Source: Schmidtea nova
Lineage: Eukaryota
Direction of reading: 5' to 3'
DNA length: 64,000 nucleotides
NCBI GenBank assembly: GCA_044892505.1
Contig: CM097882.1
Span: 429,598,001 to 429,662,000 of the forward strand
The position numbers were made by a program, and so were the translations under genes. This document shows positions 1 through 63,559 of this stretch, piece by piece; position 1 is the first letter of the stretch; each line of letters begins with the position of its first letter. Below the pieces are notes generated by a model. That model made no database searches, was not told the DNA's origin, and saw nothing but the letters and a program-made list of their open reading frames with translations.

Positions 1-576
1 ACCTATTAAATCTACTCCAGATTCAGATGAGAACTGGTACAACGAAAAGTGGGAGCTGTGTGATATAATTAATGAATTGTTTATATGCATTAGTTATATT
101 TTAATTATTAAGTTGTTTAAATATTAAGAGTTGGCAGAATTATTTAATTTAATAAAGTTTTGAAGTAATACTGTGATCTTATTTTATTATTATTTTATTT
201 AATCATTGGTATCACTAAAGGTATTATTATATTTTAATCAGTTATAGATTTCAGATATAACCATAAAAATATAACTTTCCGAAAATTCTGTAGAAATTCG
301 ACACTTTGTTGACAATGATTATAATCCCATTGCTTTGTTTATGGGTTAACAATATGTACATGGAAATAATCCTTGTATAGTACGAATATTTTATTGACGT
401 TTTGTATGTTCGCGATGATCGGATTTTATGTGTTATTGATTTGTAATGACTTTAGTTGTTGAAACATTTAATAAATGCCGTCTTATTATTAATTTATTAA
501 TAAGAAAATCATTAAGCTCGTTTGATCATAACTTTTATATAAATGTAAGTGAATAGTTATGAAATTCAGATTGAGT

Positions 577-820
577 ATGGAACTAAAATGGACAAAGCAC
601 CTTCTATCGTTAGCCCCTGAACCCACCCGCAACATTCGTTCAATTATAGCATCGATTCATTCGACGCTCACTTTTTTGCGAATGTCCACACACTTGTTGC
701 ATTACCAACATTACACCGTAGCGGGCAACAAGATGGTTATCTAATGTCTTATGTGTTGAGTTGATGATGTTTTGAGTCATAGTAACAGTCAATGTCATAT
801 TGACTTTCAACAACCCACCA
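577..820 (+). ncRNA. Structured RNA motif family 1, copy C1 (3' end of an LTR-like unit whose start is not visible)
   Basis: ACC-TTCTATC-G, GAACCC, GCTCAC and ATTACCAA/GGG motifs. Stems CATTCG/CGAATG and CTTGTTGC/GCAACAAG. Ends CCCACCA at 820. Confidence 0.7.
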
Positions 821-1568
821 AATATTAAATAAATGTATATACCTATTTCTTTGTCATTTGGTCACTTATTATTATTTTTTTGTGTTAAAATTCATCTAAA
901 AAATCAACCATAAAAAACATAACACTATATTTTACATCAATATTTTTTAAATTAGTCCACTTTCCGTGATCGGATTGATCTGAAATTTTGATAGCATATA
1001 GTGTTCTCGACAATGAATCTACTTGCCAAATATTAGCTCAATCCGAACACGGATTCATTTGGCTTCACAAATTTTGAGTGGCACATTCAAAGATTCAACA
1101 AACATACAAACACCAGCTAAGTTAATATAGACAGAGTAATAATTATAAATAAATTATCACAATTACCAAAAAAACACCAAATAATGAAATATTAATCTAA
1201 TGCAAAGGTCGTATTATCAAATGAGAAACCCCATACACAAACACTTAATTGATCGAAAATTATTGATAAATAAAAAATTTTAGAAATGTTTACTTTTTTG
1301 AGTCTCAAACCGGAACCACTAATTTTTTTAAAATTAATCTTAATCCAAAAAATGAGGTTCAGAAATTTAATTAAAACAAACTATTAAAAAATATTCATTA
1401 ACTTATTTAAGCATCTTAAAATTATTTATCGTCCGAAAAAATTTTCTTAAAGTTTTGTGAAAAATTTAGTCAATTTGAAAAATTTCTAATCCATAGTTTA
1501 AAAAAAATAAAACGGAATATTATATTTGCTATTTGTTTATAAAGACTATTTCTACAGAATTATTAATG

Positions 1569-12071: not shown

Positions 12072-12189
12072 GCCATCCGTACTGTTGGTGTATTGCTCTT
12101 TTAAATTTAAACAAAATATTAACCTTCTACTTCCTTTCACTCATTTACCTTCTACCTTTGCTCTGTTTCCTTTCTAGGGTCGCAATACA

Positions 12190-12360
12190 CACATAAAAAC
12201 CATACTGTATGTGTACCCGTGAATTTCCCTATTTATTCACGTTGGTAATGTACATAACAGCCGATCGCAAGCCAGCAGGTGAGCTCCTTCACAAGAACTA
12301 CTCCTGACTTGTCGCATCGTTCGGGTTCTACTTGACCGATAGAAGGTCTGATTCATACTA
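12190..12360 (-). ncRNA. Structured RNA family 1, copy C2
   Basis: AGACC-TTCTATC-GGT...GAACCC; GAGTAGTTCTT-GTGA-AGGAGCTCAC (GNRA loop); GTAC-ATTACCAA-CGTGAAT...TAGGGAA-ATTCACG-G-GTAC. Confidence 0.75.
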
Positions 12361-12553
12361 TCCCTTCACCCAGTCGGAGGTCTCTAATTTGGGTGAACTT
12401 AATACTCTAACGCTATCGTTCTAGTTACTTCAACCTGATACTCTATATTTCATTCACGATCCTACCCTTTATTTCCAAAAGCACAAGACAAATATTAACT
12501 CAACCACATTTATCATTCATATATTTAATTAACGCACAAAATGACATTCATTG

Positions 12554-13063
12554 TTAGTTATCGTGCACATTTACTGTCTCAATGTTCTTTAGCACAATAT
12601 TTGATGTAGAGTTATTCTTCTCGTCGGCGAGTTTCTGTTTCAGTTGTCATCGTCTCTGCGCATGTGACTTTCGACGATTTCGGGGTCTTCACTCCTGTGA
12701 TCCTTTCGTGATTTCCATTTCCGTCTCCTCACCGGGCAATCTGGTGAACCACTTTTCGAGGGTCATTGGCCTGATATGATCTCGTAGATGTACAGTCACA
12801 AAATTTTCGGTAATCATGCGCCGTCAGTTTTTCACTTCTAGCCTGGTCGCTTCTAGCTCGATCCGCTGCTCTTCGATCGTCGCTCGTGCTCGTTGTAATT
12901 TTTCTTGAACTCTCTTCATCTCCGCAGGAGAAAAATAACTCTCCTCTAAACTATTTAAATATATTAAAATTAACAAACATTTTAGAAAATAGTTCTATTT
13001 AAATTTTAAATTAATCAATTATGCACCGTTTAATCTCCCCATCGTTTCTTGATTTGATGTCAT
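12554..13063 (-). pseudogene. ORF2 family coiled-coil protein of unit B, with a putative 81-bp intron (12946-13026) and internal stops
   Basis: MTSNQETMGRLN|EESYFSPAEMKRVQEKLQR...LRDHIRPMTLEKW aligns with WFSPEQMK...LRALIRPITAQRW of 62319-62903. GT-AG removal restores the frame. Confidence 0.65.
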
Positions 13064-13349: not shown

Positions 13350-13850
13350 TTAGCGTAAATCAATGCATTCGACCACATCATCTTCATACTCCATTTCTTG
13401 AGGATCCGTTGGACTGAGAGGAGAATCAAATCTTCCTTCGGTTATAGCAGGGCCCACAACAAATCGGCCAAGACTCAAAAAATCCTCGATAGGGATTGTT
13501 CCGGTGTAATAAATCCTGAATCGCCCAGGGATCTCAGTAGGCGATTCAACGAAATATCTAGACAGGTCTTTGGGATAATCCCAGTAAACGTCCACTGGCC
13601 AGGCTCGACTACCGTGCCAGGTTATTATATCTGGACTGTCTTGGTGCAGGCTGAATGGGGGCTCCCTGCTCTTCTCTAGGAATGATGCTTGGTCTTTATC
13701 GACGATCTGTTGTGCTAGATCCGTCGGGATGTTTTTCAGTTGGAGCGCCCACACCAGATAATTCTCCCTTTTTGGCGATTCTTGTTCGTGAGATCCTCTC
13801 TCTGACGTATCCTTGTTCATCACGTTTACGCGAATGCTTTCACGCTGCAT
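13350..13850 (-). CDS. ORF1 family protein of unit B, 166 aa, function unknown
   Basis: WHGSRAWP...RIYYTGTIPIEDFLSLG aligns with WYRGCASWP...VIYWGFIPASTFKELG of 61507-61983. Confidence 0.7.
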   Translation of the reverse strand: MQRESIRVNVMNKDTSERGSHEQESPKRENYLVWALQLKNIPTDLAQQIVDKDQASFLEKSREPPFSLHQDSPDIITWHGSRAWPVDVYWDYPKDLSRYFVESPTEIPGRFRIYYTGTIPIEDFLSLGRFVVGPAITEGRFDSPLSPTDPQEMEYEDDVVECIDLR

Positions 13851-16002: not shown

Positions 16003-16117
16003 ATGGGACTAAAATGGGCAAGGCATATTTTATCGGTCGCCTTTGAACCCACCCGCAACATTCGGAAAATTATAGTTTCGATTAATTAGACGCCCACTTC
16101 TTGCGAATGTCCACCCT
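16003..16117 (+). ncRNA. Structured RNA family 1, copy C3 (3'-truncated)
   Basis: ATGGGACTAAAATGGGCA...TATCGG...GAACCC...CATTCG/CGAATG; close to C1. Confidence 0.6.
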
Positions 16118-16183
16118 GTAAAGGTTATATTTTGTTGCTATTTTTTATTATTTTTATTTTATGTAAAGGTTATATATTAATAT

Positions 16184-20914: not shown

Positions 20915-21215
20915 TTTTCGTGGCAGCCCGAGTTGGCCAATTATCACAGCAAAAGATTTTGAAAATGGATACGCTGAAATGGATCGTGCTACTCTTGGAC
21001 GAATCGGGCCTTCCTCAAACGATTAATTATTGGGGCTTCATTCCGGCCTCCGCACTGAAGGAACTGGGATTCATCCTAATGACTGCAATCTGGCCCCTGC
21101 AAGAGACCCAGTAAAAATCATTGACCGCTTCAACCGACTCACCGAGCTCTATCTAAAAGGATCTGCAAATTCGTCATATTTTCTCATATAAAGACAAATT
21201 GTGCATCGAATGACC
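20915..21215 (+). pseudogene. ORF1 family fragment of unit D
   Basis: FRGSPSWPII.../WIVLLLDESGLPQTINYWGFIPASALKELGF...LQIRHIFSY; frameshift and stops; homologous to 61507-61983. Confidence 0.8.
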
Positions 21216-21349: not shown

Positions 21350-21888
21350 GACGATGAATACAGCAAAAAATCGCTAATAACGTAGATAAACAGAGGCAGA
21401 ATCGGCAGATACGAGAGCTTCAACGACAAGTGCAAAGAATCACTGCCCAAAACGAAGTTTCGACAGAAATTGTTTGCTCCCGAAAAGATGAAGGGGCAAA
21501 TTATGAAGACAAACAGAGCCCCAAAAGCCTTGACAGAGACTAAGGTAGAACTCGACGCAGTTCAAAGATAATTACAGAGCTGCGTAAATGCGCTAGCCCG
21601 GTCGTACATTGACACCGAACTACGGGCTCTTATCAGACCAATCACGGCTCAACGATGGACAACAACCGGCGCAACTAACCCCTGAGTAGGCACCGACTGT
21701 AACGATCTGCCTACCTCGGATCCCATCGAAATCAAGCGGATCACAACTAATCTCTCGAACACTCTCACAGTCTCTAAGCGTAGAAGATTGGGGTCGAAGC
21801 AACGGCGCCGCAAGAGAGAATTTGCGTAACAGTTAGCCGCCCAAGTGGATAGGCTCAATGAGCTATCAGAACTGGATTTGCCGATTTA
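21350..21888 (+). pseudogene. ORF2 family pseudogene of unit D
   Basis: LFAPEKMKGQ...TKVELDAVQR*...RSYIDTELRALIRPITAQRW...LGSKQRRRKREFA; homologous to 62319-62903. Confidence 0.85.
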
Positions 21889-22072
21889 GAAAATTTGTAA
21901 ATAAAAATAAACCAATTGCGCTGATTTCCTTCTTGTTTATGGCAAATCCCAGATTGAATTAACTATAATTTTGAACGATATTATAGGTAACCGAAGCTAG
22001 AAAATTTAAAATAACCATTCACAAAATAATAGTAGGAACTGATAAAACTGATAGAACCGAAAAATTTAATTG

Positions 22073-22241
22073 ACAGCGTAAGACCTTTTATCGGCAGCGT
22101 GAACCTGGCGAGGAAATTTAATGGGGAGTAGTTGTAGCAGTAGAGTTTATCTGCCCATCATTTTTCCGCCACGTGCGCATTACCAACCCTGTTAATTAGG
22201 GAATAACTAGGGGCACAAGAGTGATAGTGTCGTTTTTATGT
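22073..22241 (+). ncRNA. Structured RNA family 1, copy C4
   Basis: GTAAGACC..TATCGGCAGC..GAACC; GGAAA..ATGGG/CCCAT..TTTCC; ATTACCAA, TAGGGAA loop, GGG. Confidence 0.7.
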
Positions 22242-23989
22242 AGGGATATTGGTGAGGAGTTCCTTAGTCATCATACCTTAGCTACCACCCACCCATAATA
22301 CCCAGCAGTTATTATAATTAATTATTTTGGCTAAAATAATATTTTAGAAATACCAAAGCATTCAATATTTTAGTACTTAATCGTTTGCGAATTTTTTTTC
22401 CATTGTATTTCCTGACACAGAAAATACTCTTTCGCAAGAGGTTGATGTTAAATAGACAGTCAATAATGTATTATATAAATTTTCCAGTTTTTCACTTCTT
22501 TTAGCATCATTATTACTTTCAATATGCTTAAATTCTTTGTCAATATTAAAATTCTCGTTATTACCTTTTTTAAATTTCATTAACATTTGAATGGAATTTT
22601 GTAAATTGTCAATTTATCTTGAGCTATTTCTTTTTCTGAACCTGATTGTGATTCTGAGTTTTAATGATTTTAAATTTTATCATCATGATTGCTAATATCA
22701 AGAAGAAATAATCTTTGAAACAATTGTTTTGCAAATTTTTTATACTAAATTTGGATGAATAGTTAAAAAAACTTATTTTCATTTTGTTTTGAATGATTTC
22801 CTTTATGTAAAAATATAAGCAATGACACAATTTCTTTATTTCTTCGTTTTTCATTTTCATTTTTTAATATTTCTAATATATTAAGTGATGGTTCAGCATG
22901 TATATTCTTTCGTCTTCTCAGAACATACAACATTGTTCATCCTGCTGTAATGAAATTTGCGTTGTTTTTACTTGAACATCTAGCATAGTTGGTTCAACTG
23001 CAATTAATATTTGTTAATTCGCTAAAGAAATTTTCTTGGAACCGTTTTAAACCAAGTTCATCTACAGTTTTATTTAAACAATCAATTAACTTTAAAAATC
23101 TATTTTTAGCCGATGCCAATGTGTTCCAACTTGTTATTAACATTGAATATCAATTTAAAATCCTTTCATTTTTGTTGTACATGCTTCAAAAGAATTTTAG
23201 TACGAATTTTTAAAAAACTTAATTATTTTTCGCATTTTGTATAATGCAGGTTTTATATTACAAAGTAATGTTTAATTTTCCAATATTTCTTCTATTAGTA
23301 TATCTCCATCATAAGGTGGTTCTTATTCCTCATCGACTTGATTTTCTTCATCATACTCTTCTTCTATTCAGTCTTGTCTTCATCTAATTATAGAACATCT
23401 ATATCTATATCAACCTTTTTAGACAACACTTTACATACAGTGAGGTGGATTGCATGATTATAGAACAATTGTTTTTCTGCGGTAATAATTGAACAATACT
23501 TAATCATTTTACTGAGACTGTCATTTGTTGAGGTAATAACACTCGCTGCCAAATTCTTTTAAAGCGCCCTCAACTATCTCTGGATTTTCAGCAGTACATT
23601 TTTCATTAATTGAAACTAGCCCAAAAACAAGCAACTTTGAATTTGAGCAGCGCAAAAAACAGATTCAAATATTTCTTCATCAAAATATCTGTTCACTCAT
23701 AAAAAGAAATGCTGAATTTGTTTTTCATGATTCAATAATTACATGGTTTTTCAGACTAATCTGATTTTGTTAAGTTCAAATCTGACTTTATTGAATTCAA
23801 ATTTGATTTTAACAATTTAAATTCGATTTCTTTAAATTCAATTTTGATTTCAATAAATTCAATTTCGAAATTATTATTTTAATATGTTTAATATGAAAAT
23901 ACATTAAAACACCAAAATTGGTTAGATACTAATTATAAATTATATAAATAAGTTATTTAATCTTCAATAATATTGTTAATAATGCTTCT

Positions 23990-34345: not shown

Positions 34346-34368
34346 ACAAGGAGAGTTGACGAGGAGTC

Positions 34369-34381
34369 AAAAGGGGGGGAA
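34369..34381 (+). promoter_or_regulatory. Polypurine tract
   Basis: Purine run immediately before the TG of the 3' LTR. Confidence 0.9.
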
Positions 34382-36283: not shown

Positions 36284-39200
36284 AGTTTTTATATTAATGA
36301 TTTTTATTATAGTATAGTAGAGTATTTATACTATATTACATAAGTTAATCGTAATATATAACATCAATTCGTCCAGCTCATGCCTTGAAATCTAAAATAA
36401 GCATTATCTTACTAAATAAAATCGACTCGCATTCACCTTCGTCTTCACAAAAATTTCTTCTCATCCTTTTGGAATCCAGTATATGTGAAATTAGAAATCA
36501 TGAAAAAATGCTCAATCGAAAACTATTTATTAAATAATGAACTGTGTAAAGAAGTGACGAATTATTAATGTAAAGATTATGATTTTATGTGAATTTTAGG
36601 TAAAGAACTCGAGCTGGTGGAAAATTTTTTCGAAGAATATTATTAAAAAATTTTAGTCTTATATGAATTTTTATCTTATTTAATTGATGAAAAATTTAAT
36701 TTTTTTACATTGAGTTTTGTGTATTATTATACTGGATCTTAGCATGGAATTGCTCCTTTGATTTTGTATAAAATTTATACATGATAAAGTATAAAATGGG
36801 ATTATATAGTTTAGAAAATAAAGTCAACAACTGAAAAAGATCTGTAAAAGGAATTAATAAAATTTAAAATTCAAAATTTCAATATTATAAAAATAAAAAT
36901 TTTATAACTTTGACAGAAACATAAATTCGAAATATTATAAAATTATTATTATAATCAAATATAAAAATTTATCTCATCTATTAATTCCATAATACAAATT
37001 AAGGGAAAAATTCTAATTCTACATATATATTTATATACTTATAATATAAAAAATTCAAACTTAGAATTTTATTATAAAATTTTTATTAAAATGTTATATA
37101 ATTATAAATTACAAAAATTATTATTATTATTTTAAGTTAGAAATCATAAAAATTTATTATTATTATTTTTAGAAATTATTTTATATATTATATCTATATT
37201 ACTTATAAAATACCCCCCTAATATCACATACAACCATGTTTGTGAAACAATTCACCCATACCATTCAATAACATCATCCATACTAATAACACAAGCAACA
37301 TCTATTTAAAATACAATACACACACCACACCGTATCACTCAATAACATTCATTAGCAACATACACCCAAACAATTCATACAGAAAATCTACACAGTTACG
37401 TTAGTTAGTACCATACATCTATAACTCACACAGCACTCACTTAATTACATCCACATCCACACCGCTTATTTCATCCAACAGACAAATAAACATACCATCA
37501 CATACATTCGCAACAATAGAACATTTATTTCAAAGCTATAAGAATATCCATACACACTAATTCGCAAATCATCATATCTCAGCAAACCACACCACTATAG
37601 AACATTTTCTCTGGGAATCACCTTATAAGGTATATTTTAGCCATTCATAAACACAACCAGACCATCGACTTATCGCCACGTCTCATTTCACGTAGGAAAA
37701 TCCCATCACCCTTATGAGCAATTTCACTACAATCATCAATAACATACTCAGCAAGATATACATAAAATCTTTACACCTAATTGCTGATTAAGTTGATTGT
37801 TTTATCCATTTATACTACCTATGTAGCAGATCATATCCAGGAAATGCCTATGGATTTCTATTTATCTATACTCTGAATTAGGTTTAACCGTTTCACTTAA
37901 TGATCTCCTGTAACCTTAACTACCTTATTTATGCTGGACAACGCCCATTAAAATACATTATATTCTATAATTCATTATTTCAGTCATTTAGCCCTTTTGA
38001 CCCAGCTATCGTATTCTAGATAATAAACTAACGAAACAATGCTGGTAAAGAAAATGAGAAACATATATTACCCTCAACGACGATTCACCAAAAGTTTTGC
38101 AAAATTAATAATAAATTTGTATAATTAAAACTTAGCCAAATCATTATGCAAAAGTTTCTACTAATAACCATAAAAAGAAATTGAAAATAAAAATTCACAA
38201 CACTTACCAACAATCAAACATGAACGCACAAAAATTTTATTTATAGCTATAATAACAACAATAAGATTTGCATAGTGTTGATATTGATTAAAATGCGAAA
38301 GAGGAGAGAGACCAGTGGCAGAGTAAATTTGTATGATTATGCTCATTGTGGGTGAAAAATCCCAAAATCGTCTCAGAAGTCAGCGATAGACGAGATCCCA
38401 AGACTAGATCAGTATTGTTGTCGGATGCAATTTTCTTTTGAAAAAGATGATGTTTGACTAATTCCAAGAAGAGCTGACGATTTGAACAGCAGAAAATTTG
38501 AACAAATTCCGTTAGGCTTATACACTAAAACGAAAATAAGAAAATATCACAAATAAATCAATTAATTTACCATAAATATTGTTCCAGCATCCATAAAAAC
38601 ACTAAATCGTTGCAATTGTCTGAAATGCAGGGAAATCCCCATACTAAAATTAGATATCTAAAATCAATAATCTTAGTATATAAATTAAATTGCCATAAAA
38701 TAATCTAACCAATAGAAATCTGTTATTTTTTGATTGCACATCTATATAGTTTCTGTTGAAGTTCCATTATCTTCATCAAAACCAAAGGGGGGTCGCTTAA
38801 ATTAAAATCGATAATATAATTTTAAAAATCGATAGTTAAGGGAGATCTCACATGGATGAAACTTAAAAAATTTAAGGAAATCATTTAGATACTGTCACTA
38901 ATGCCTCAGTGAGAATTTAAATGTAAATTTATTAGAAATTTTAAAATAAAATTTATAAAATTTTGATAAGAATAGCAAGATAGACATTAGGTATAGGGGA
39001 TAAATAGAGTTTAACTAAATTTACTGACACTAAAATATACAAATTTAAAAAAATCTGAAAAATAATAAAGTTTAGTTAAAATCAACAGAAAATCAAATAC
39101 CCCGAACATACGTGTTAATAAAAGATTATTCGATTCCCGAATTGAAATTTGTTGAGACTCGCTATCGAAATATGTAAAAACCCCCTTAACTTGCTGTAAT

Positions 39201-39302
39201 GACGAATGAATTAATTGATTTTGATGTATAATGATAATTTTTGTAATTGTTGTACATTAACCATCCTTGATATGTCTCAAAAACGTTTAAACATTTTTAG
39301 CA

Positions 39303-39878
39303 ATGAATCCAGTGCAACAGTTAGAGGAAATTCATAAACTGTTGATCGAGAACGCGAAACACAATAAGAAGGTCGACGCACGTTTTGCCGATCTAGAAGC
39401 TAAGGGGTTGCCCAACACAGACGCGCTCCAGCTGATGACCAGTGGAATGGAGAAATTTCGGGCCCGCTGTCGAGAGATGGAAGCGACCTGGTCCGACAAA
39501 GAAACAGTGGACCGGTTAAGAAAACAGAATTAAATGCTCATCCAACAAGCTGCCGAAGACGCAAGGAGATTGCGCGCATTTCGAGTCTCAATGCGAGAGC
39601 AGGAGCTCGTGATTGAGAAATTGAGGGTAGACAGTGGCATCATCTCCGCCATACTACCGAAATCTCAGCCTCCACTCCAGGAATTGTTCCGTGTGAGAGG
39701 GGAGGAAGAAATCGCATCTTCATCAGCAGTTCCAACCAAGCCAAAACTATGGAGGCCCAGTAAAGGGGCCAGAGCCAGGAACAAGCGTTGCCAAGAAGCG
39801 CGAGTGCTAGGCCAGTTAAGAGTGGAGGCCTCGAAAATCATTAATTTTGACATTGATTTAACAAGTCCACGCATATGA
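39303..39878 (+). pseudogene. Coiled-coil ORF with basic C-terminus (191 codons, one in-frame TAA at 39531); probable distant ORF2
   Basis: Two track ORFs abut in frame. Length, architecture and position before the RNA motif match ORF2; sequence similarity is weak. Confidence 0.55.
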
Positions 39879-40076
39879 TTTGATATTGTATTAAATGTTG
39901 TAATATGATTATAAGTTTTCTCTTATATTGTTTCTACTATTTGTTTGTTTGAACAAGGACAGATAAAAATAAGAGATTTAATAAGTTAAATAATTAATAA
40001 ATAAACAACGGTTTGGTGAAAATATTCAAATGGAGACCTTGTATTGGAAATCCAAAGCGATAGAGCGTTTGATTTA

Positions 40077-40245
40077 AAGGGACTAAAGGGGCATTAAACC
40101 TTCTATCGGTAGCCCTTGGACCCAGGAGATATTCGGTCAATCATAGTTTCGTATTGACGACGCTCACTGATTGCGAATACCCACCCATTTGTTGCATTAC
40201 CAACGTTACCTAGTGACGGGCAACTAGATGGTTATTTCAATGTTT
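40077..40245 (+). ncRNA. Structured RNA family 1, copy C5
   Basis: All conserved blocks present. Confidence 0.75.
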
Positions 40246-41305
40246 TGTATGTTGAGTTGTTGATACGAGATTTTATTTTTACTTACAACACGAAAATAGA
40301 TGAAAATTATTTCTGATTCCAAATGAAATAACCACTTGAAACAATAGTCCAGATATCATAGCAGAATAACTTATAAAATTTCCAATTGTCAGGGCAAATT
40401 CCAACGAGAGAATCAATGAATTCTAAAGTTATAACGTAAAAGGCTGGATAATTTAATCTTATCCCACTTACGATCTTGCTTGTCGAACGGCCCATATCGA
40501 GAGCTTCTTTGAAGGGCTGGCATCCAAAACTAGTATCTAAATCATGAATGAAATATCTTAAAGGAGTAAAACTAAATCAACTTACCAATAAATTCAGTTG
40601 AAATTAGGGGGAATCCCATTCTAAAAATATAAAAATAATCAATAATTATAATATACAAAATCAAATTCGTATAATATAAATTAGCCAATAGGAATCCGCC
40701 AATTTTTCAGTGGCGTTTATATAGCTTTCTTCTTTTTCGGGGGAACGCCGATGATTTTGATGGGAACGCGATCAAGATCGGATTTCCTAGTTTGAGTTTT
40801 GACCTAAAATTTGGAAATAAACATAAAATTCGAAAATTTGAGAAATACCGATGTTAAATTATTTGGAGAATTTATATTGTTGCTGTTGCTAAGGCCTCGG
40901 CAAATTTTTGAAAATTAAAAATTAAAGTTTTAACAAGATTTTAATTGTATATATAAAGCAAGATAGACAATAGGATTAAAATACAAATTAGGTTTATCTA
41001 AATCTTCAATATGGAAAACACAAAAATAGTTGTACAATCTTGAATATAGTAGTAAATTTGATAAAATTAACAGTGATTGAAAATCCCCGAATATATGCAT
41101 TTTTACAGGAATATTCAATCCCCGAATTGAGTTGCGATGATATGCTTGAGCACGAGCTTACGAATAAAAATGGATGCACGAAAACTCCTGTGTTTTGAGA
41201 TAATACCGTGTATAATGGCTGATTGCGAGAAATTAATAAATTTTTATCGATGAAATTATTTCATTTTGCTAATTTAAAAGAGATAACTACAGTTAAATTG
41301 TTAAG

Positions 41306-41541
41306 AAGGGACAAAATGGGCATTAAACCTTCTATCGGTAGCCCTTGGCCCAGGAGATATTCGGTCAATCATAGTTTCGAATTTTCGACGCTCACTGATT
41401 GCGAATACCCACCCATTTGTTGCATTACCAACGTTACATTGTGACGGGCAACAAGATGGTTAATTCTAATGTTTTATGTGTTGAGTTGTTGATGAGAGCC
41501 ATAGTAACGTCAAGGTCATATTGACGATCAACAACCAACCA
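41306..41541 (+). ncRNA. Structured RNA family 1, copy C6, plus terminal hairpin
   Basis: All conserved blocks, then GTTGTTGA...GTCAA/TTGAC...TCAACAAC. Confidence 0.75.
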
Positions 41542-42769: not shown

Positions 42770-44400
42770 TGGTGTATTGGTAGTTGATTTTATTTGAACT
42801 CTGTTTGGCTAGGGCAATAAATGTTTACACTAACACAAAATGGATTGTCTCCGCTCTGGTACCCGTGGAATTTCCCTAGAATTATCCCACATTGGTGCTG
42901 TACCATACGGTGCATACCAAGCGAACATGTGAGCGGCCTGAGTGGTCACTACTACTCGCTTTCTAGAGGTTTCTCGTCTTCTTTTGAAAATACTCCACTC
43001 AACCGTATCCTGCTTTCCATCTATGTTGGACTGCCAATCAATCTCCAATATTTCTCACTCATCACACTGATTGAAGCTCTTGAATTCCATAGCATCTCAT
43101 AAAATCCATTTATTTTAATCGTACTCCACCTTCTGTCATCATCCTTCTTAAACATCACATCCTTTACAAAATTTCGTTTTTTATACTCATCTACTGTCTC
43201 GACCCTATTGACGAAATGTAGACAACAGGGTCTTGGTTTTTTTGAGTCTCAACATTATGTATGACTGGGGCTATCAATTCTTTTGATCTGATACACTCTT
43301 CGTTTCAGTCTTTGTACATTACCTCTTGATTTCGCTAACAAATTGCAACTTCTAAATGAATGACCTTCTTTACCGCATATTAAGCATATGTCCTTCAAAG
43401 GACACTCAAATCGTATATGGTCACTTTGTCGACAACAAAAGCATTGACCAGGTCTTAACCTTTCTTCTGCTGGCTCAGGTAGACCACAACATCTATTTTA
43501 AACTTTCCTTGCAATATGTTTCATTGAAACTAACGGTGGTGGTCTACGATCCGTAGGTGTCCTCTCATTATATTATTCACTCTATCAATTTGTCTTTCGC
43601 GTCTTTCATTTCTATTTTGATAACTTTATTCTGGTTGACGACTTGAACACATTCTATTATTTAAAGATGTTTTTAGTCCATTGCTTCTGTTTATCTTGAG
43701 CAATGTTTGCATAGGTTGATTTCACTACTACCTGAACTTCTTCAAATCGTTCTTTTGCATCATAACCTTCCCGTGCCTCATATACCTTTGCTAAATTTCT
43801 AATTTCTTCCCTCGTGATGTTAGCCTTCGTTTATATATATTTTCTTTCAAACGGTCGTTCCGAACTCTGCTGCACAAAATCAGTTCAACAATATTTTCTT
43901 TTGAAATTCCACAGTCAAAAACTTCGTCAACGAGCTTCTTTACTCGTACCTCTAATGTAAAAAATCTTTCATCGTTATTTTATTTAACTGCTAAAAAGTC
44001 ACAAATCTTATCCATAACGGACTTTTTTTTGGTAAATGTTTCATTAAAGCGTTCACGAGCTTTTTCATTCGTTGTGGCAATGTCCTTAAATTCTTTCCAG
44101 AGAATAGATGCCTCTTCAGACAATAATTAATCAAAAATATTTACTAAATTGAGATCGCTAAGTAGCATCCAATCTTCAATATCCTTGAGCTATTTCTCTG
44201 CTTCTATCGTGCTTCGGCCGTCAAATCTTCTGACATTAAAATTCAAAATGTCTTTTGCCTGTTTAGGCAAAGATTCCATAATCATCTTTTTATGCTGATT
44301 TCTTGTCACCACGTGAATCGGCTCGATTTTTTCGGCGTGGTCGCCAATTACAATTTCTTCATAATTCATAATAACAATTTGTCAAATTAAAAAATATTTT
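42770..44400 (-). pseudogene. Decayed Gypsy-like gag-protease
   Basis: VRRFDG...KDIEDW (gag-like); MLWNSRASISVMSEKYWRLIGSP (degenerate DSGAS); many stops. Confidence 0.55.
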
Positions 44401-48554: not shown

Positions 48555-48715
48555 TGTTCAACGATAACCGCACAGTGACTGCTCTTTTCTCAACACCCGT
48601 TATTAGACAGCGTTTGAAATGTGTCGCGAGTAATAGAAAAATACCTGTAAATTTTGAGTTTCAGCAAAAATTGCGAATTTCCAGGCACTCCTATAGGAAG
48701 TCGTATCAGTCCTAC
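48555..48715 (-). ncRNA. Structured RNA family 1, diverged copy C9
   Basis: AGGACT-GATACGAC-TTCCTATA-GG-AGTGCCT-GG; GACAC-ATTTCAAA-CG...CG-G-GTGTT. Confidence 0.55.
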
Positions 48716-53456: not shown

Positions 53457-54548
53457 TGTTGAGGATACCTAAAATACAAAATAATATAAAAATAATAAAA
53501 TTACCTGGGGAAAAATAGTCATGACGAAGGAGACAGTCAATGGGAACACAGAAAATAAAACGCAAATAAGAAGAAATGAGAAATAGGAATCAGACAAAAG
53601 AAATCAGACAAGAAAACAAAAACAAAGGTCAGCACTAATTAATTAGTGCAAAAGGAAAAGGAATTTCAAATCGGGAAAAATGAAAATAACAACAATGTAC
53701 TTATCTCGTCAGCTTGTCAGAGATAACGGGAACAAAAATAAAACAAACCGGAGCGGCAAAAAGAAAAAAACAAAGTAGCCGAGTGTCGAGCTGTCAAAGG
53801 CAACATGGGAGTTCTAAAAAAGTATTGGAAATGCCAGAAGCAGAAATGGAAAAAAGCAAGGTGTCACGAGTGCCGAACTGTCAGGAGCAACATGGGAGTT
53901 ACGGAGAAAAAATGGAAAATGCCAGAGGCAAGAGTGCAAATGCGAAGTGCCACAAAGTGACGAGATATAAAAGGAGGAAGCACAGCAGAAGCGGTCAGAA
54001 TTTTAGAAGCAGAAGAATTTTAGACAGAACATTTAGGCGGAATATTGTTAAACAGAAGGGTGGAACAGAAGCTGCGAGAAACAGGAATCAAATTGTTGAA
54101 TTGAAGTTAGAAGAGAAAATTGGTAACTTGAACAGAAGTGAAATTAAGAGTCGAAGTGAAATACGAAAAGAAATTTGTTAATTGAATCAGTTGCAGAAAT
54201 AGAAATTGTGTTGCAAGGACAAAGGAAGCAGACGAGAATTTAAAGCTAAAGAATCAAGTTAAAGCACGGGAAACAAATCGAGATCACTTACGAATAATTA
54301 GTCCAAGTCAGTGGTTAGTAGTTGTTGTTTTCTAGTCATTATACAATTGAGCTATTCTTCACGAAGTGTCGTAATAAGCTCGTATAATTGTCGAAAGAGG
54401 TATTCAATTGATCGTGATATTTTGGATCGTGTAAATCATTGTAATAATCAAATAAAGTTTGTGTCATTGGAATTGTAATTTGGGGGTCAATTAAAGGCAC
54501 ACTTCGGAGTCAGATATTTGATTGGTAACTTTTACCATTTCACCAACA
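53457..54548 (+). mobile_element. Probable solo LTR (1092 bp) inserted in the unit carrying C7
   Basis: TGTTGAGG...TCACCAACA, internal 65-bp direct repeat, AATAAA, CGGAGTCAGA shared with the 16184 LTR. TSD imperfect (AAAC/ACCC). Confidence 0.45.
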
Positions 54549-55422
54549 ACCCCAGAAGCCAACAAAACGAACCAATCAGCTTCGCTTAATTTTAATTCTC
54601 TTCTAAAATTGTTAATATAGATTTAATGATTAAATTCGATTTTATTCTAGACAAAACAAAAGGGGTAGTTCTGACTCGACAATGTAATATATTTTAAATT
54701 AGTCCATACGCTTCATAATTCAAATAAGGGTAAAAAGGGAAATCCAAGGTTTAAAATTAATAAAATTTCTAAGTAATTTTGTGGTTATCGTTGCTTAGGC
54801 CTCGGTGGTAATTTAAAATTTTAAAGTCAAATTTTTGAAAAAAATTTTAATATAATTTTTACAGGATAGGGGGACGATAGAATTAAAATTTAAACCAAAT
54901 TTAATTAAATTTTAAAATTAAAGTTAGAAAATGGGAAAAACCACGAAAATGATAGTCATTCAAACCAAAACAACAGTGATTGAATATCCCCGAATATATC
55001 AATTTCTAAAGGAATATTTGATCCCCGAATTGAGTTGCGATAATATGTTTGACTATGATTTTGTGAATAAAATAAATGTGCGAAAATGCTTGTGTCTTAG
55101 GAAAGTATAGTATATAGTGGTTGGATGGAATAATTGATTTTATTATGATTTAGATTTTGATCAGAAAATGTGAGGGTCAATTTATATATATTTATTTGGA
55201 TTTAAGATTAGAGAACCAAATGCTAGAACTCTTCGAGAACTTAAGTCATCTTCAAAATGATTGAATTGATTTTGTTTTGCCTGTGGCTGGTATACATTTA
55301 CTTTGACATTATTCTTGAATGATGTAGGTTAATTTGATGTTAATAAATTTGTATTGATGTAGATTATTTATTTGAATTGTCGATTAAAATCTTATTGAAT
55401 GCTTATAGATAAATCGTTGAAT

Positions 55423-55661
55423 AAGGCTCTCAAATGGGCATTAGACCTTCTATCGGTAGCCCTTGAACCCATTGAGATGTTCTATCAATCATATTTTCGA
55501 TTTTTCAACGCTCACTGTTTGCGGACATTCACCCATTTGTTGCATTACCAACGTTACATTGTGACGGGCAACAAAATGGTTTAATTTAATGTTTTATATG
55601 TTGAGTTGTTGATGTGAGCCATAACAACGTCAATGTCATGTTGACTGTCAACAACCCACTA
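55423..55661 (+). ncRNA. Structured RNA family 1, copy C7, plus terminal hairpin
   Basis: All blocks present; 9-bp closing stem GGCATTAGA/TTTAATGTT with G-U pairs. Confidence 0.75.
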
Positions 55662-56130
55662 TTTCCTCAGATATTTCACCACTGTTATCTAATACTTTCT
55701 CTGAAAAAGTAAGGTGCTTTGTCACTGGTATAGTTTCACTAAGTGGATCTGGTGCTCTACTGGATAAACTGATTTCGTTCTTTCAAAACCCACTGACGAT
55801 AAACAGAAATAACAATCATTTGACATATACGGGGAATACCGAAGGTCAACACTTTGGTGTACCAGTAAACCGCAATAATAATTTACTTAAATAATTAACA
55901 AAAGCATATTCTAGTGCCTAACTTTTCCGAATATCTTGCATTATCTTCAGACGAAAATAAAGATCTTAAGCTGTGGCCAACTTTGAATTTCCGATAAGTG
56001 AATATTTCCGAGCCTTTATCTTGAGAAAGTGACAGCAAATATAACAAAATTGATCTTTGACATGATTGAAAACGTGTCAAGAAATCTTGCAGATAACCTA
56101 TAAGGTCTAGTGTCGAAATATAATTCAAGG

Positions 56131-60568: not shown

Positions 60569-61506
60569 CTTTGGATAAAACAGACTTAATACCTAATCTT
60601 ACAACGTCAGTTGAGAGTGTAAAATTTAGCTCACTAATCAAATAGACTTTAAATTCTAGACGAACCGATCGAATCAAACCCAGACGAATTAGGTATTTTG
60701 GTTTCTGTATTATTTTATTCATGATTGTGTCATTTGTTTTGTCATTTATCTATTGATCTAATTATTTATGTGTTTATGCGTTCATGTGTCGAAATTTGTT
60801 ATATGAATTATATAAATTAAACGTTATTGTGATTAGACTCAACATTAAAATATATAATGATCATATTAATTTTGCGCCGTTGGGAGCTTTAGGTTCCCAA
60901 GGTGTCAGTCCGTGGCGTGGTGCTCGAGGGCTCCACACACGGTAAAGTAATAAATAACCAAATATGATTTTATTAGTAGTGGTCGAGATTTGCACATGGG
61001 ACACCCAACAAATCCGGGGAATTATTTTCCGATCATTTTAACTACAGAGGAGGCGATTTTCGGATAAAGTCTAACGATGTAGGATAAGAAAGAATTTTTC
61101 GACTGTGAGGAGGCACAATTTTTCACCCTCACCACAGCACAGTTGCTAAATAAACATCTAATAAACCTTAGAAAATTAGGTCGACCGCATTTGATATGAA
61201 AGGGGCGTTTTCCGAGTAAGCTAGGAGATATATGACGTGAGAGAGTTTCCGTTTTGGGATACCAATGTTTCGATATCCACGCAGACAAAACACCAATTTT
61301 CGACTATATTATTGATCGTAAACGAATAAATCTAAGCAGACACGAGAGTAAGGTACACCGTAACGAGCAACAGTTTTTCTTGATTTCAGTTAAGGTCTAA
61401 GGAGAAGACAAATAATAAAGGCATCACGATGAGAGATAACATCTACTATAATTAATCATTGATTTAAATTGTTAACTATTATAAAATTCAGCATCATTCT
61501 AGTATC

Positions 61507-61983
61507 ATGACTAAACACAGATTCACCATCAAAAAGCGACGAGAACGAGCCCGAATTAGCCCATTAAAGCCGGCTCCTTTTGAAATTTTGCAACAAATCC
61601 ATCAAAAAATGTGGGCATGGCGCCGAGAGCTTGTAACCGCATGTCCATTTACAGTATGGGACCATCCACGGCATCACGTATGGTACCGGGGATGCGCTAG
61701 TTGGCCAATCATTCCAGACGAGGAATTCGAATCATGGCACGCCGCCTGGTTCGTTCTGATGTTGGATAAGCGGGGATTCCCGAACTGTGTAATTTATTGG
61801 GGGTTCATTCCAGCCTCTACATTCAAGGAATTGGGATTCACTTTCCATACAGCAATACGACCCCTTCGGGAAGCTGAGAGGATCCGTCTCCAGCAAGCCT
61901 CACCCAACTCCACTGGAATCAGCTCAAATTTGCAAATCAGATCGATATTTTCGTACCGAGGAAAAATGACCGAAGATGAATAG
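61507..61983 (+). CDS. ORF1, 158 aa, Trp-rich, function unknown
   Basis: Open frame followed by AATAAA; homologues in units B and D. Confidence 0.75.
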   Translation: MTKHRFTIKKRRERARISPLKPAPFEILQQIHQKMWAWRRELVTACPFTVWDHPRHHVWYRGCASWPIIPDEEFESWHAAWFVLMLDKRGFPNCVIYWGFIPASTFKELGFTFHTAIRPLREAERIRLQQASPNSTGISSNLQIRSIFSYRGKMTEDE

Positions 61984-62318
61984 TTGAATAAATGGCCACC
62001 TGTTTTGAATTAAATAAATGTTTTAGAGGAATCTGAAGTGTTGCATTTTGTTAATAGCGCTATAATGTAGATGAGAAATTTATTAACCTCTAGTGCTGTA
62101 GATGTTACCGTCAGTAGGACATTCTTTCACTAATGTAAAACAGTTGAGCAAAATTTTGAGCCTCCAATCATTAAATAGAAAAATAATTTTGGTGTAAAGA
62201 TTTAATACTTGAACACAGTAGTATGCATTTTTGCTCCTAAATCGTAAATAGTCACTTAATTAAAATGACCTTGTTGATAGGTTCTCCAGCGAATTTATCG
62301 TTATAATATTCAGACATC

Positions 62319-62903
62319 ATGCCGATTTCAGAAAACTCGAAGAGAATCATGGGACAAATCCAAGATAGAAAGTTGAGGGACCAGCAGAGGCAGATCAAGC
62401 GACTCACGGTAGCAAATGATGAACTGAGAGCGAAGTGGTTCTCACCCGAGCAAATGAAGGGTCAATCGCAAAAACTCGAGCGAATGCAGGAAGCACTGGC
62501 CGCAACTAAATTAGAGCTTGACGCCGTCCAGAGAGAACTACGAAATTGCCTGAATGCAGTAACAAGAAGTTATATCGACTCCGAATTACGAGCGCTAATC
62601 CGGCCGATCACGGCTCAGCGCTGGACACAAAGTACTTATCAAGATGTCGCTTGCGGGACGGAAGATGGTATCATCATGGCCCCCACTCTTGTAACGGACG
62701 AATTGCCTACTTTTCACAGTGATCCATCGAGAACAATTGCGTCAGCACTTGTCCTAAACCCACAGCTTCGAAAACACCGAATGGGATCGCGACAGCGTCG
62801 GCGTCGCCGAGAATTTGCGAAGCGCCTGGACGAGCAAATCCACCACTTAAACTCCTTAACCGAAGCAGAGTTGATTCAGGAGATTAGTCTGGAGTTTGCG
62901 TAG
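62319..62903 (+). CDS. ORF2, 194 aa, coiled coil with Arg-rich C-terminal motif, function unknown
   Basis: Open frame followed by AATAAA at about 62946; homologues at 12554, 21350, 48902 and possibly 39303. Confidence 0.8.
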   Translation: MPISENSKRIMGQIQDRKLRDQQRQIKRLTVANDELRAKWFSPEQMKGQSQKLERMQEALAATKLELDAVQRELRNCLNAVTRSYIDSELRALIRPITAQRWTQSTYQDVACGTEDGIIMAPTLVTDELPTFHSDPSRTIASALVLNPQLRKHRMGSRQRRRRREFAKRLDEQIHHLNSLTEAELIQEISLEFA

Positions 62904-63188
62904 GAAAACATCAATGTCAAATAACAACCTGTTTTTATTATTTTAATAAAAGTGTTTTTGTGTAAATTTTGTCTCTCATCGTACGAGTTCACTAAATAAA
63001 ATAAAACAACATAAGTAATTCGTAGAAATAAAAAAATCGCGTCATAAAACCTACACCGACCGTTACTTAGCAGCGAGAGCTTTCGTAGGCTCGTAGAACA
63101 GCGAAGGAGAGTGTCATTGGGAAAAGCGTGTGATGGATCCTAAGGAGATGTAGTATAAGATTCAGTGGGCGACCATCCATAGAATGTA

Positions 63189-63357
63189 AATGCGTAAGAC
63201 CTTCTATCGGCAGCAAGGACCCGAGGGAAGATAAATGGGGAGTAGTTTTGGCAACAAAGCTCACCTGCCCATCATTTTTCCACCACCGTATGCAGTACCA
63301 ACTTGACTAGTAGGGAATAGTCAAGGGCATACGCGTGTAGTAGTCATGTTATGTATG
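63189..63357 (+). ncRNA. Structured RNA family 1, copy C8
   Basis: AGTTTTG-GCAA-CAAAGCT (GNRA); CGTATGC/GCATACG; CTTGACTA/TAGTCAAG; TACCAA/GGG. Confidence 0.75.
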
Positions 63358-63559
63358 GTTATGGGCGTGGAATCCCTAGTATACGTACTCATCAATAGTC
63401 GTTCAATTAATGATTAACTATTTATTTGAATTACTTAAAACCCAACCATAATCCCAGCATTACTATGCCACCTGCCAGGATCGAGCAAGAGTGGTATAGT
63501 AAAGATGGTTTGTAAAAATAGATTTATTTTCTCAAGTTACTTATCCGACCAAAGCTTTC

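What the first reader, a model, noticed from the sequence alone, without database searches (positions are those of the whole stretch)
63189..63357. Nine copies of a covarying ~170-nt RNA fold with a partly HDV-like pseudoknot, not matching any family I know
Seen: copies at 577, 12190 (minus), 16003, 22073, 40077, 41306, 48555 (minus), 55423 and 63189. Loop and bulge nucleotides are conserved (ACC-UUCUAUC-GG, RACCC, UAGUU/GCUCAC, AUUACCAA opposite GGG) while stems change compensatorily: CAUUCG/CGAAUG, UAUUCG/CGAAUA, UGUUC/GGACA; and UUGUUGC/GCAACAA, CGUAUGC/GCAUACG, GUAC/GUAC. G-U pairs and GNRA loops (GCAA, GUGA) work only on the ORF-sense strand. A long-range stem closes the domain. Loop UUC with downstream GA/GG changes to UCC with GG in C9. 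Established: P1-P2-P3-L3-P1.1 nesting is the HDV/CPEB3 ribozyme scaffold. However, the G25 equivalent and a J4/2 catalytic C are absent here, and P1 is poor in C1 and C8. Inference: a new self-cleaving ribozyme, IRES, or export/packaging element positioned after the ORF2 polyA signal.
Basis: partly seen in the sequence, partly recalled or inferred. Interest (0 to 1): 0.88.

Follow-up and report, generated by a model that had tools for sequence, protein, structure and literature searches.

The report
Structured RNA tail of a mobile element
The repeated ~175-base motif is a real, covarying RNA fold with no Rfam match, and it forms the 3' end of a small unclassified mobile element that carries two orphan protein genes. 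It most likely marks the element's RNA for copying rather than acting as an HDV-like ribozyme.

Summary
Confirmed: eight of the nine listed copies are real (covariance-model E 1e-20 to 1e-43). The copy at 48555 (minus) is not supported. A ninth, diverged copy lies at 42832-42988 (minus).

Two hairpin domains show strong compensatory change: 87.6% of cells are paired against 35-42% in slid controls, and 27 of 39 pairs change on both sides. The HDV-like part (domain I and the proposed pseudoknot) is nearly invariant. It has no covariation support, and RNAalifold does not predict it. No Rfam family matches.

The motif sits 63-97 bases before the 3' end of 0.3-1.9 kb units. These units are flanked by 9-10 bp direct repeats that look like target-site duplications; one unit is 5'-truncated and two have lost a gene. 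Intact units carry two ORFs under purifying selection, with no detectable relatives and no reverse transcriptase.

Best reading (about 0.5): a cis-acting 3' recognition module of a retroposon copied by a reverse transcriptase supplied in trans. This resembles R2 3' UTRs, the tails of stringent LINEs and the TRE5-A C-module.

Ribozyme, IRES, packaging-signal and DNA-level readings are less likely. The RNA family, and probably the element family, are new; the kind of function is known.

The parts
63183..63359 (+). Core RNA motif, copy C9 (B type): domain I, long hairpin domain II, domain III
   Evidence: CM hits (145.5 bits). Each domain folds on its own.
61481..63413 (+). Unit C9: ORF-A, ORF-B, spacer, core motif and 3' tail. 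Flanked by the 9-bp direct repeat TTAACTATT at 61472-61480 and 63414-63422.
   Evidence: The 3' end agrees with the tail alignment. The 5' repeat alone is not statistically significant.
61507..61983 (+). ORF-A of C9, 158 aa, intact, orphan
   Evidence: pN 0.33 against pS 0.84 versus copy C4, in the ORF frame only. No relatives found.
62319..62903 (+). ORF-B of C9, 194 aa, intact. The N-terminal half looks helical or coiled-coil and the C-terminus is arginine-rich. Orphan.
   Evidence: pN 0.26 against pS 0.92. No relatives found.
548..828 (+). Unit C1 (A type): a 5'-truncated 281-nt copy holding only the 3' module. Core motif at 583-757. Flanked by ATAAATGTA at 539-547 and 829-837.
16009..16160 (+). 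Copy C3 (A type). Domains I and II are kept. Domain III has decayed into T-rich sequence.
   Evidence: 89.6 bits.
38539..40289 (+). Unit C5 (A type), the longest A unit. It holds an ORF-A remnant, a broken ORF-B-like gene and the core motif at 40082-40253. Flanked by ACGAAAATA at 38530-38538 and 40290-40298.
39303..39878 (+). ORF-B-like gene of C5, broken by one in-frame stop
40561..41540 (+). Unit C6 (A type) with the ORF-B region deleted. Core motif at 41311-41482. Flanked by AATATCTTA at 40552-40560 and 41541-41549.
54520..55666 (+). Unit C8 (A type) with the ORF-B region deleted. Core motif at 55429-55602. Flanked by TCAGATATTT at 54510-54519 and 55667-55676.
22067..22244 (+). Core motif, copy C4 (B type), partly decayed
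   Evidence: 106.5 bits.
20916..21201 (+). ORF-A-like gene of C4, broken by two in-frame stops within the matched span
21455..21880 (+). ORF-B-like gene of C4, broken by three in-frame stops within the matched span
12188..12363 (-). Core motif, copy C2 (B type)
   Evidence: 127.1 bits. Domain II folds at -28 kcal/mol on its own.
13350..13850 (-). ORF-A of C2, 166 aa, intact
12749..12976 (-). ORF-B-like gene of C2, broken by at least one in-frame stop. It also carries a 74-bp foreign repeat.
42832..42988 (-). Domain I is lost. Domains II and III are kept with different stem sequences.
48591..48626 (-). Only a weak domain-III-like fragment is present, so it is not counted as a copy.
   Evidence: 8.9 bits, E 1.4. 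Absent at E<=2. No BLAST or tblastx match.

Best explanation
The fold is the conserved core of a roughly 250-nt 3'-terminal module of a family of short mobile units (about 1.7-1.9 kb when complete). Each unit carries two small orphan protein genes and no reverse transcriptase.

Shown:
- The module has two hairpin domains with compensatory change and invariant unpaired nucleotides.
- It always lies on the ORF-sense strand, 63-97 nt before the unit's end.
- The units are separate insertions flanked by 9-10 bp direct repeats.
- One unit is 5'-truncated down to the module alone.
- Two units have lost ORF-B but kept the module.

Inferred: the units spread through an RNA copy. The folded module, through its invariant loops, is the handle by which a reverse transcriptase recognises that RNA and starts DNA synthesis at the nearby 3' end (target-primed reverse transcription). 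Because the units encode no reverse transcriptase, the enzyme would come in trans from an autonomous partner that was not seen in this window.
For: Copies and homology between the two subfamilies.

Structure:
- 87.6% of cells are paired against 35-42% when partners are slid.
- 27 of 39 pairs change on both sides, against 4-10 in slid controls.
- 0 of 500 shuffles reach the observed values on four of the five measures; 2 of 500 do on pair types.
- RNAalifold recovers domains II and III on its own.
- Copy X, left out of the model, keeps 24 of 26 pairs, 14 of them with both sides changed.
- Unpaired columns are more conserved than paired ones: 22/55 against 7/74 invariant.

The module is the only part alignable between subfamilies, while synonymous sites of the ORFs are saturated.

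Mobile-unit evidence:
- Exact 9-10 bp direct repeats sit at the homology boundaries in four of four testable A units. Random window pairs show such repeats 3.5% (>=9 bp) or 1.2% (>=10 bp) of the time.
- There is a 281-nt 5'-truncated copy and two internally deleted copies.
- The units have no terminal inverted repeats or LTRs.

No Rfam family matches.

Precedents for 3' RNA structures required by the reverse transcriptase, and for RT-less derivatives moved in trans: PMC4176376, PMC11194090, PMC3159450.
Against: - No reverse transcriptase sharing this tail was found. The RT and GIY-YIG fragments in the window carry no copy of the motif.
- Only nine copies in roughly three or four lineages were available, and the alignment was fitted to the model. 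The covariation statistics therefore lean towards the structure.
- The strand signal is weak, so RNA rather than single-stranded DNA is inferred mainly from orientation, the 5' truncation and the flanking repeats.
- The repeat lengths are narrow (9-10 bp), which a DNA transposase could also produce.
- The A units carry an internal CCAAT/TATA-like pair and a short 5'/3' terminal redundancy that the model does not explain.
- No sequence from the source genome or its relatives could be reached.
Confidence: 0.5

Rival explanations
1. A protein-binding RNA signal used by the element's own proteins rather than by a reverse transcriptase. ORF-B (helical N-terminal half, arginine-rich tail) would bind the invariant loops to stabilise, export, package or mark its own RNA, in the manner of a cis-preference or packaging signal.
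For: - The invariant unpaired nucleotides suggest sequence-specific protein contacts.
- ORF-B is under purifying selection and ends in a conserved basic stretch.
- Motif and ORFs always share a strand.
Against: - Units that have lost ORF-B (C6, C8) or everything except the module (C1) still inserted, so any binding protein can act in trans.
- There is no evidence on binding.
- This reading can coexist with the best explanation rather than replace it.
Confidence: 0.2
2. A self-cleaving ribozyme, HDV-like or of a new class, that processes the element's transcript.
For: - The hairpin with a 7-nt loop followed by a short closing helix and a long variable hairpin loosely recalls P3/L3, P1 and P4.
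- A 3-bp loop-to-linker pairing is kept in 23 of 24 cells.
- HDV-like ribozymes are known in retrotransposons (PMC3774820, PMC3185411).
Against: - No HDV-family or other ribozyme model in Rfam matches, even at E<=5-10.
- The candidate P1 is 2-4 bp, against about 7 (PMC3774820).
- Domain I has no covariation and RNAalifold does not predict it.
- The loop-linker pairing varies only by one-sided transitions, and shuffles equal it 500 of 500 times.
- No P2 partner is conserved in B copies.
- Known retrotransposon HDV-like ribozymes sit at the 5' end; this fold sits at the 3' end.
- An HDV-type cut upstream of the fold would detach it from the RNA, yet the fold is carried in every copy.
Confidence: 0.06
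3. A DNA-level structure: a single-stranded DNA fold or protein-binding end of a DNA transposon or rolling-circle element.
For: - Stem-loops near one end occur in Helitron-type and HUH-type elements (general knowledge).
- The strand test by G-U against A-C is weak.
- The flanking repeats fall in a narrow 9-10 bp range.
Against: - HUH and rolling-circle elements make no target-site duplications (general knowledge).
- The units have no terminal inverted repeats.
- A 5'-truncated copy with its own flanking repeat is hard to get by cut-and-paste.
- A U-G pair at the base of one helix is kept in 7 of 9 copies.
- There is no transposase in or next to the units.
Confidence: 0.06
4. Not mobile at all: a locally duplicated host gene family (two cistrons or two exons) with a conserved structured 3' UTR, or a separate small non-coding RNA gene downstream of it.
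For: - ORF-A and ORF-B are under purifying selection.
- A CCAAT/TATA-like pair lies upstream of the ORFs in A units.
- All copies lie within 64 kb.
Against: - Direct repeats flank four of four testable units.
- Copies lie in both orientations among other transposons.
- There are truncated and internally deleted copies.
- Most ORFs are broken.
- Adjacent units C5 and C6 each have their own flanking repeat rather than being one tandem duplication.
Confidence: 0.08
5. An internal ribosome entry site.
For: It is a structured RNA downstream of an ORF.
Against: Homology between copies, and the repeat-defined unit ends, stop 63-97 nt after the fold, and no shared ORF follows it.
Confidence: 0.01

Closest known systems
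3' UTR RNA of R2 and other site-specific non-LTR retrotransposons (PMC11194090; review PMC12203849)
   Same: A multi-helix RNA of a couple of hundred nucleotides at the very 3' end of the element. It is conserved in structure more than in sequence. There is no poly(A) tail. It serves as the binding and start site for target-primed reverse transcription.
   Different: R2 encodes its own reverse transcriptase and inserts at one rDNA site. The units here have no reverse transcriptase and their flanks differ. Rfam found no R2-element or other match. Binding was not tested here.
3' tail stem-loop of stringent-type LINEs and the SINEs that share it (PMC4176376; PMC5135761)
   Same: The 3' tail is the recognised part and is shared by long and short non-autonomous copies. 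Copies are 5'-truncated and have target-site duplications.
   Different: Those tails are a single short stem-loop plus terminal repeats. Here there are two large covarying domains plus a conserved domain I. No LINE partner is known, and the short copy shows no sign of a pol III promoter.
TRE5-A C-module and the ORF2-less derivative TRE5-A.2 of Dictyostelium (PMC3159450)
   Same: A structured 3'-terminal module that is essential for retrotransposition. A derivative that keeps ORF1 and the module but lacks the reverse transcriptase ORF is moved in trans. That is the same layout as ORF-A/ORF-B plus module here.
   Different: There is no sequence or protein similarity. The host is unrelated. The TRE5-A structure is about 50 nt. 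The trans-acting partner is known there and unknown here.
Penelope-like elements: reverse transcription starting in an AC-rich stem-loop, with AT-rich targets and an optional terminal 'tail' (PMC11167929)
   Same: The units end in an AC-rich stretch next to AT-rich flanks, and their 5' starts repeat a piece of that AC-rich end. Penelope-like RT and GIY-YIG fragments lie in the same window.
   Different: No hammerhead motif is present. There are no pseudo-LTRs. The GU-rich/AC-rich terminal stem is convincing in one copy only. The Penelope-like fragments in the window carry no copy of the motif.
HDV-like self-cleaving ribozymes of retrotransposons (PMC3774820, PMC3185411, PMC4908430)
   Same: A small hairpin with a 7-nt loop next to a short helix and a long variable hairpin, inside a mobile element.
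   Different: The fold is at the 3' rather than the 5' end. The candidate P1 is far too short. There is no supported P1.1 or P2, no catalytic C and no model match.

Membership tests
HDV-like ribozyme | Match to a curated HDV-family covariance model | tested here: not met
   Rfam 15 gave nothing at gathering score over the window. It gave no ribozyme family at E<=10 or E<=5 in the copies and their units.
HDV-like ribozyme | Five helices in a nested double pseudoknot, with a P1 of about 7 bp annealing just after P3/L3 (PMC3774820) | tested here: not met
   The candidate P1 (H1) is 4 bp in A copies and 2-3 bp in B copies. H1 and H2 show no covariation, and RNAalifold does not predict them.
HDV-like ribozyme | P1.1 pairing between L3 and the junction after P1 | tested here: inconclusive
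   A 3-bp loop-linker pairing is possible in 23 of 24 cells. It has no two-sided change and equals the shuffles 500 of 500 times.
HDV-like ribozyme | P2 closing helix after P4 and J4/2 | tested here: not met
   An ATTAA/TTAAT pairing exists in some A copies only. B copies have no complementary partner.
HDV-like ribozyme | Catalytic cytosine in J4/2 and self-cleavage | not testable with these tools
   The C-rich linker after domain II is conserved, but no position can be assigned without the pseudoknot. Cleavage cannot be tested in silico.
3' recognition module of a target-primed (non-LTR type) retroposon | Lies at the 3' terminus of the element on the transcript strand | tested here: met
   Homology and the repeat-defined ends lie 63-97 nt after the fold. 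The fold is always on the ORF strand.
3' recognition module of a target-primed (non-LTR type) retroposon | Insertions flanked by target-site duplications; 5'-truncated copies sharing the 3' end | tested here: met
   9-10 bp exact repeats sit at the boundaries of four of four testable A units, against 3.5% (>=9 bp) and 1.2% (>=10 bp) by chance. There is a 281-nt truncated copy at 548-828. The sample is small.
3' recognition module of a target-primed (non-LTR type) retroposon | An element encoding reverse transcriptase and endonuclease that carries the same tail | tested here: not met
   The units hold no RT. The RT and GIY-YIG fragments elsewhere in the window lack the motif. The rest of the genome could not be searched.
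3' recognition module of a target-primed (non-LTR type) retroposon | Specific binding by the reverse transcriptase and dependence of copying on the structure | not testable with these tools
   This needs biochemical or genetic evidence.
SINE | Head derived from tRNA, 5S or 7SL RNA with an internal pol III promoter | tested here: not met
   No tRNA, 5S or 7SL match at the Rfam gathering score. The short copy is simply the 3' part of the longer units.
LTR retrotransposon (motif inside or next to an LTR) | Long direct terminal repeats | tested here: not met
   Self-comparison finds no LTR pair around the units. Only a 16-22 nt AC-rich similarity links the 5' start and the 3' end.
Helitron / HUH single-strand DNA transposon end | No target-site duplication; terminal hairpin close to a fixed end | tested here: not met
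   The units have flanking direct repeats. The CTAG-like site first taken for an end lies inside the conserved tail.

The most novel reading that the evidence does not exclude
The units are a new kind of mobile element. Its two orphan proteins, together with the structured 3' module and the short 5'/3' terminal redundancy, would form a copying or packaging system of their own, or the module would be a new class of catalytic RNA. On this reading it is not a passenger of a known reverse transcriptase.
Probability: 0.1. Interest if true: 0.85.

Novelty: new variant of a known kind. Interest (0 to 1): 0.45.

Why it matters
Structured 3' ends are how many retroelements tell their own RNA from the cell's, but only a few (R2, a few fish LINEs, TRE5-A) have been described in detail. 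This is a well-delimited new example. It has two large covarying domains and a set of invariant loop nucleotides. It sits in an element that keeps two selected protein genes of unknown function and no polymerase.

If the reading holds, the covariance model gives a ready probe to find the whole family and its unknown partner in the source genome. The orphan proteins would become candidates for RNA-binding factors of retroposition. If the reading fails, the alternatives (own mobility system, new ribozyme) are more unusual.

Tried and rejected
- HDV-like, hammerhead and other ribozymes, IRES, tRNA-like, 5S and 7SL: no Rfam match.
- Copy at 48555 (minus): rejected.
- Long-range closing stem and P2-like stem: not kept across subfamilies.
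- GU-rich/AC-rich terminal stem: beats shuffles in one copy only.
- Helitron end at CTAG: rejected, because homology runs on past it.
- LTR reading of the two adjacent copies: rejected. Each has its own flanking repeat and no LTR pair is present.
- A Tc1-like gene thought to be split by unit C6: no Pfam support.
- An 11-bp repeat as the flanking repeat of C2: rejected, because part of it is shared with copy X's tail.
- Relatives of ORF-A and ORF-B: none by word search, by a profile against 1.84 billion representatives, or in PDB and Pfam. The AlphaFold model is useless (pLDDT 38).
- The exact ORF-B protein is not on record.
- The loose pattern scan of metagenomes and viral contigs gave 124 loci, all chance. 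A stricter pattern gave nothing in prokaryotic genomes or viral contigs.
- Thermodynamic z-scores are modest and not strand-specific.
- MAFFT alone misaligns domain III between subfamilies, so the counts rest on model-guided alignments.
- The source organism could not be identified. The best relatives of the neighbouring Pao element are 52% identical and come from marine invertebrates.

Full report
**Setting.** The window is AT-rich (27-42% GC) and full of transposon remains. These include a young BEL/Pao LTR element, Penelope-like RT and GIY-YIG fragments, an IS1595/Merlin-like DDE gene and a Tc3-like fragment. The best relatives of the Pao polyprotein are only 52% identical. The named ones come from corals, molluscs, a sponge and a sea cucumber. 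The source is therefore probably a marine invertebrate that is absent from the protein collections. Nothing suggested human DNA or an animal virus.

**Are the copies real?** BLAST of the window against itself links the listed places in two groups. I call them A type (577, 16003, 40077, 41306, 55423) and B type (12190 minus, 22073, 63189).

- A covariance model built on seven copies finds those seven plus the copy at 16009 at E 4.5e-12 or lower.
- A model built from four A copies alone finds the three B copies at 59.9, 36.9 and 19.6 bits. The two groups are therefore homologous.
- A third model, built from the structure-guided alignment, gives E 1e-20 to 1e-43 for the eight copies. It also lifts an unlisted minus-strand copy at 42832-42988 to 28 bits, E 7e-5.
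It has no BLAST or tblastx match either, so I do not count it.

The tally is again nine, but not the same nine.

**The structure.** Each copy, folded in three pieces, gives the same architecture in the better-preserved copies.

- Domain I is a 3-bp hairpin with loop TTCTATC inside a 2-4 bp helix.
- A GAACCC linker follows.
- Domain II is a long irregular hairpin of three stacked helices.
- A C-rich linker follows.
- Domain III is a 7-10 bp helix, an asymmetric internal loop (ATTACCAA opposite G) and a terminal hairpin.

Counts on the model-guided alignment of nine copies:

| Measure | Observed | Control |
|---|---|---|
| Cells forming standard pairs | 87.6% | 35-42% with 3' partners slid by 1-3 columns |
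| Pairs with a change on both sides | 27 of 39 | 4-10 when slid |
| Covariation score | 0.459 | at most 0.093 when slid |
| Shuffles reaching the observed value | 0 of 500 on four measures, 2 of 500 on pair types | - |

The eight-copy alignment gives the same picture. RNAalifold, predicting freely on the same alignment, recovers domains II and III and extends two helices. Copy X was not used to build the model. It keeps 24 of 26 pairs, and 14 of them differ on both sides from the copy at 63185. Unpaired columns are more conserved than paired ones: 22 of 55 are invariant against 7 of 74.

Caveats:
- There are only three or four independent lineages.
- The alignment is fitted to the model, because MAFFT alone misaligns domain III between the groups.

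**What is not supported.**

- Domain I, the part compared with HDV P1/P3/L3, is almost invariant. It has no two-sided change, and RNAalifold does not predict it.
- A 3-bp pairing between the hairpin loop and the linker is possible in 23 of 24 cells. It varies only by one-sided transitions and equals all shuffles.
- A P2-like or closing stem is not kept in B copies.
- The reported loop change in the last copy is not in the sequence.
- G-U cells (18) only modestly outnumber A-C cells (11).
- MFE z-scores reach -3.0 at best and are no better on the sense strand in A copies.
- GNRA loops occur in two copies only.
- Rfam 15 has no match at gathering score in the window and nothing relevant at permissive thresholds in the copies or their units.

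**Context: what the fold belongs to.** Upstream of the B copies lie two ORFs. ORF-A is about 160 aa. ORF-B is about 190 aa, with a helical N-terminal half and an arginine-rich end.

Between the copies at 63189 and 22073, non-synonymous differences are far fewer than synonymous ones (pN 0.26-0.33 against pS 0.84-0.92). This holds only in the ORF frame. These are therefore real genes with saturated silent sites.

ORF state by copy:
- Both ORFs are intact at 61507-62903.
- ORF-A is intact at 13350-13850 (minus).
- The ORF-B-like gene of C2 has at least one in-frame stop.
- In C4, the ORF-A-like gene has two stops and the ORF-B-like gene has three.
- The ORF-B-like gene of C5 has one stop.

A-type units have the same order. 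Two of them (C6, C8) have lost the ORF-B region.

Neither protein has any detectable relative:
- Pfam
- PDB
- word-based searches
- a profile search of 1.84 billion representatives

The structure prediction was too poor to use.

**The units are insertions.** Past the core, all copies share a tail of 60-100 nt: a GU-rich stretch, a CCNTAG site, a small hairpin in A copies and an AC-rich end. At the points where homology between units stops, exact direct repeats flank the units:

| Unit | Flanking repeat | Positions |
|---|---|---|
| C1 | ATAAATGTA | 539 / 829 |
| C5 | ACGAAAATA | 38530 / 40290 |
| C6 | AATATCTTA | 40552 / 41541 |
| C8 | TCAGATATTT | 54510 / 55667 |
| C9 | TTAACTATT | 61472 / 63414 |

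Random pairs of windows of the same sizes from this window share an exact repeat of 9 or more bases 3.5% of the time, and of 10 or more 1.2% of the time. Four of four testable A units do. The fifth repeat (C9) is not significant on its own, but it fits the predicted 3' end.

The units are:
- 548-828 (281 nt, only the 3' module, 5'-truncated)
- 38539-40289
- 40561-41540
- 54520-55666
- 61481-63413

They have no terminal inverted repeats and no LTRs.

A fixed structured 3' end, 5' truncation, internal deletions, flanking duplications and no poly(A) tail are the marks of target-primed retroposons of the stringent type.

**Mechanism proposed.** By analogy, the module would be the handle by which a reverse transcriptase recognises the element's RNA and begins copying near its 3' end. 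The analogues are the R2 3' UTR (PMC11194090), stringent LINE tails (PMC4176376) and the TRE5-A C-module with its ORF2-less derivative moved in trans (PMC3159450). The invariant loops would be the contact points and the stems the scaffold.

- Shown: the fold, its position and the insertion signatures.
- Inferred: the RNA intermediate, the trans-acting enzyme and the binding.

I give this about 0.5.

**Rivals.**
- A binding site for the element's own basic ORF-B protein for packaging, export or cis-preference (0.2; it can coexist with the main reading).
- A host gene family or separate non-coding RNA gene (0.08).
- A ribozyme (0.06).
- A DNA-level structure (0.06).
- An IRES (0.01, as no cistron follows).

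**Unexplained.**
- The three full-length A units start, 13-16 nt in, with an AC-rich stretch resembling the AC-rich 3' end (p<=0.003 for two comparisons). This is a short terminal redundancy without LTRs.
- A CCAAT/TATA-like pair lies about 150-190 nt inside these units.
- The Penelope-like element literature describes initiation in an AC-rich stem-loop, AT-rich targets and an optional terminal tail (PMC11167929). Penelope-like fragments are in the window, but they carry no copy of the motif and no hammerhead was found. The link is only a lead.
- The GU-rich/AC-rich terminal stem beats shuffles in one copy only.

**Reach of the searches.** No sequence outside the window could be brought in.
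- The exact ORF-B protein is not on record.
- A loose pattern scan returned 124 loci that nhmmer shows to be chance.
- A strict pattern found nothing in prokaryotic genomes or viral contigs.

**Housekeeping.**
- I built profiles (three covariance models and one nhmmer profile) only to search and align.
- The polyadenylation hexamers counted, and the CCAAT/TATA labels, come from general knowledge, not from a tool. The hexamer count shows only that such hexamers occur at the background rate (4.4 per kb per strand).
- In my working I also compared a few other short textbook motifs from memory. They are not used as evidence.

Noticed in passing
window 27128-35441: A BEL/Pao LTR retrotransposon with 1061-bp LTRs that are 99.7% alike and two long open ORFs. 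The first ORF carries pieces matching TCP-1/cpn60, HSP90 and ubiquitin ahead of the gag-like DUF1759 and the protease. A metagenome relative (P0098) also combines Pao domains with ubiquitin and HSP90.
   Followed up: partly
window 17044-17949: A 906-bp palindrome (92.6% self-complementary) holding a GIY-YIG ORF at 17387-17755. It looks like two 5'-truncated Penelope-like copies joined head to head.
   Followed up: partly
window 8582-10820: Inverted arms 8582-9392 and 10010-10820 are 99.5% alike. They surround an ORF with a reverse transcriptase domain (9532-10029, minus). N gaps lie on both sides (8353-8581, 10866-11074).
   Followed up: no
window 2498-3692: A compact DNA transposon: an IS1595/Merlin-like DDE ORF (2603-3556) between roughly 80-bp inverted repeats (2498-2576 and 3610-3692, 90% alike).
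   Followed up: no
window 1569-1642 and 12949-13022: A 74-bp repeat, 95% identical between the two places. The second copy sits inside the ORF-B region of unit C2 and may be a small insertion.
   Followed up: no
window 4832-5402 and 11126-11792: Satellite-like tandem arrays of the same family in opposite orientation, each next to N gaps.
   Followed up: no
window 38539-38580, 40561-40600, 54520-54560: The 5' starts of three units carry an AC-rich stretch like the units' AC-rich 3' ends (16 of 17 bases between 40574-40590 and 42775-42790). This terminal redundancy is unexplained.
   Followed up: partly
window 38700-38750, 40680-40725, 54568-54620: A CCAAT-like box followed 36-44 nt later by a TATATAG-like box, conserved inside three A-type units upstream of the ORF-A remnant.
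   Followed up: no
window 53714-54181: A lysine/arginine-rich 155-aa ORF with an internal repeat of about 86 nt, just upstream of unit C8. It has no Pfam match.
   Followed up: no
window 63500-64000 (minus strand): By eye, the reverse strand reads like the C-terminal part of a pogo/Tigger-type DDE transposase, running off the window end. The Pfam call failed on a stop codon and was not repeated.
   Followed up: no
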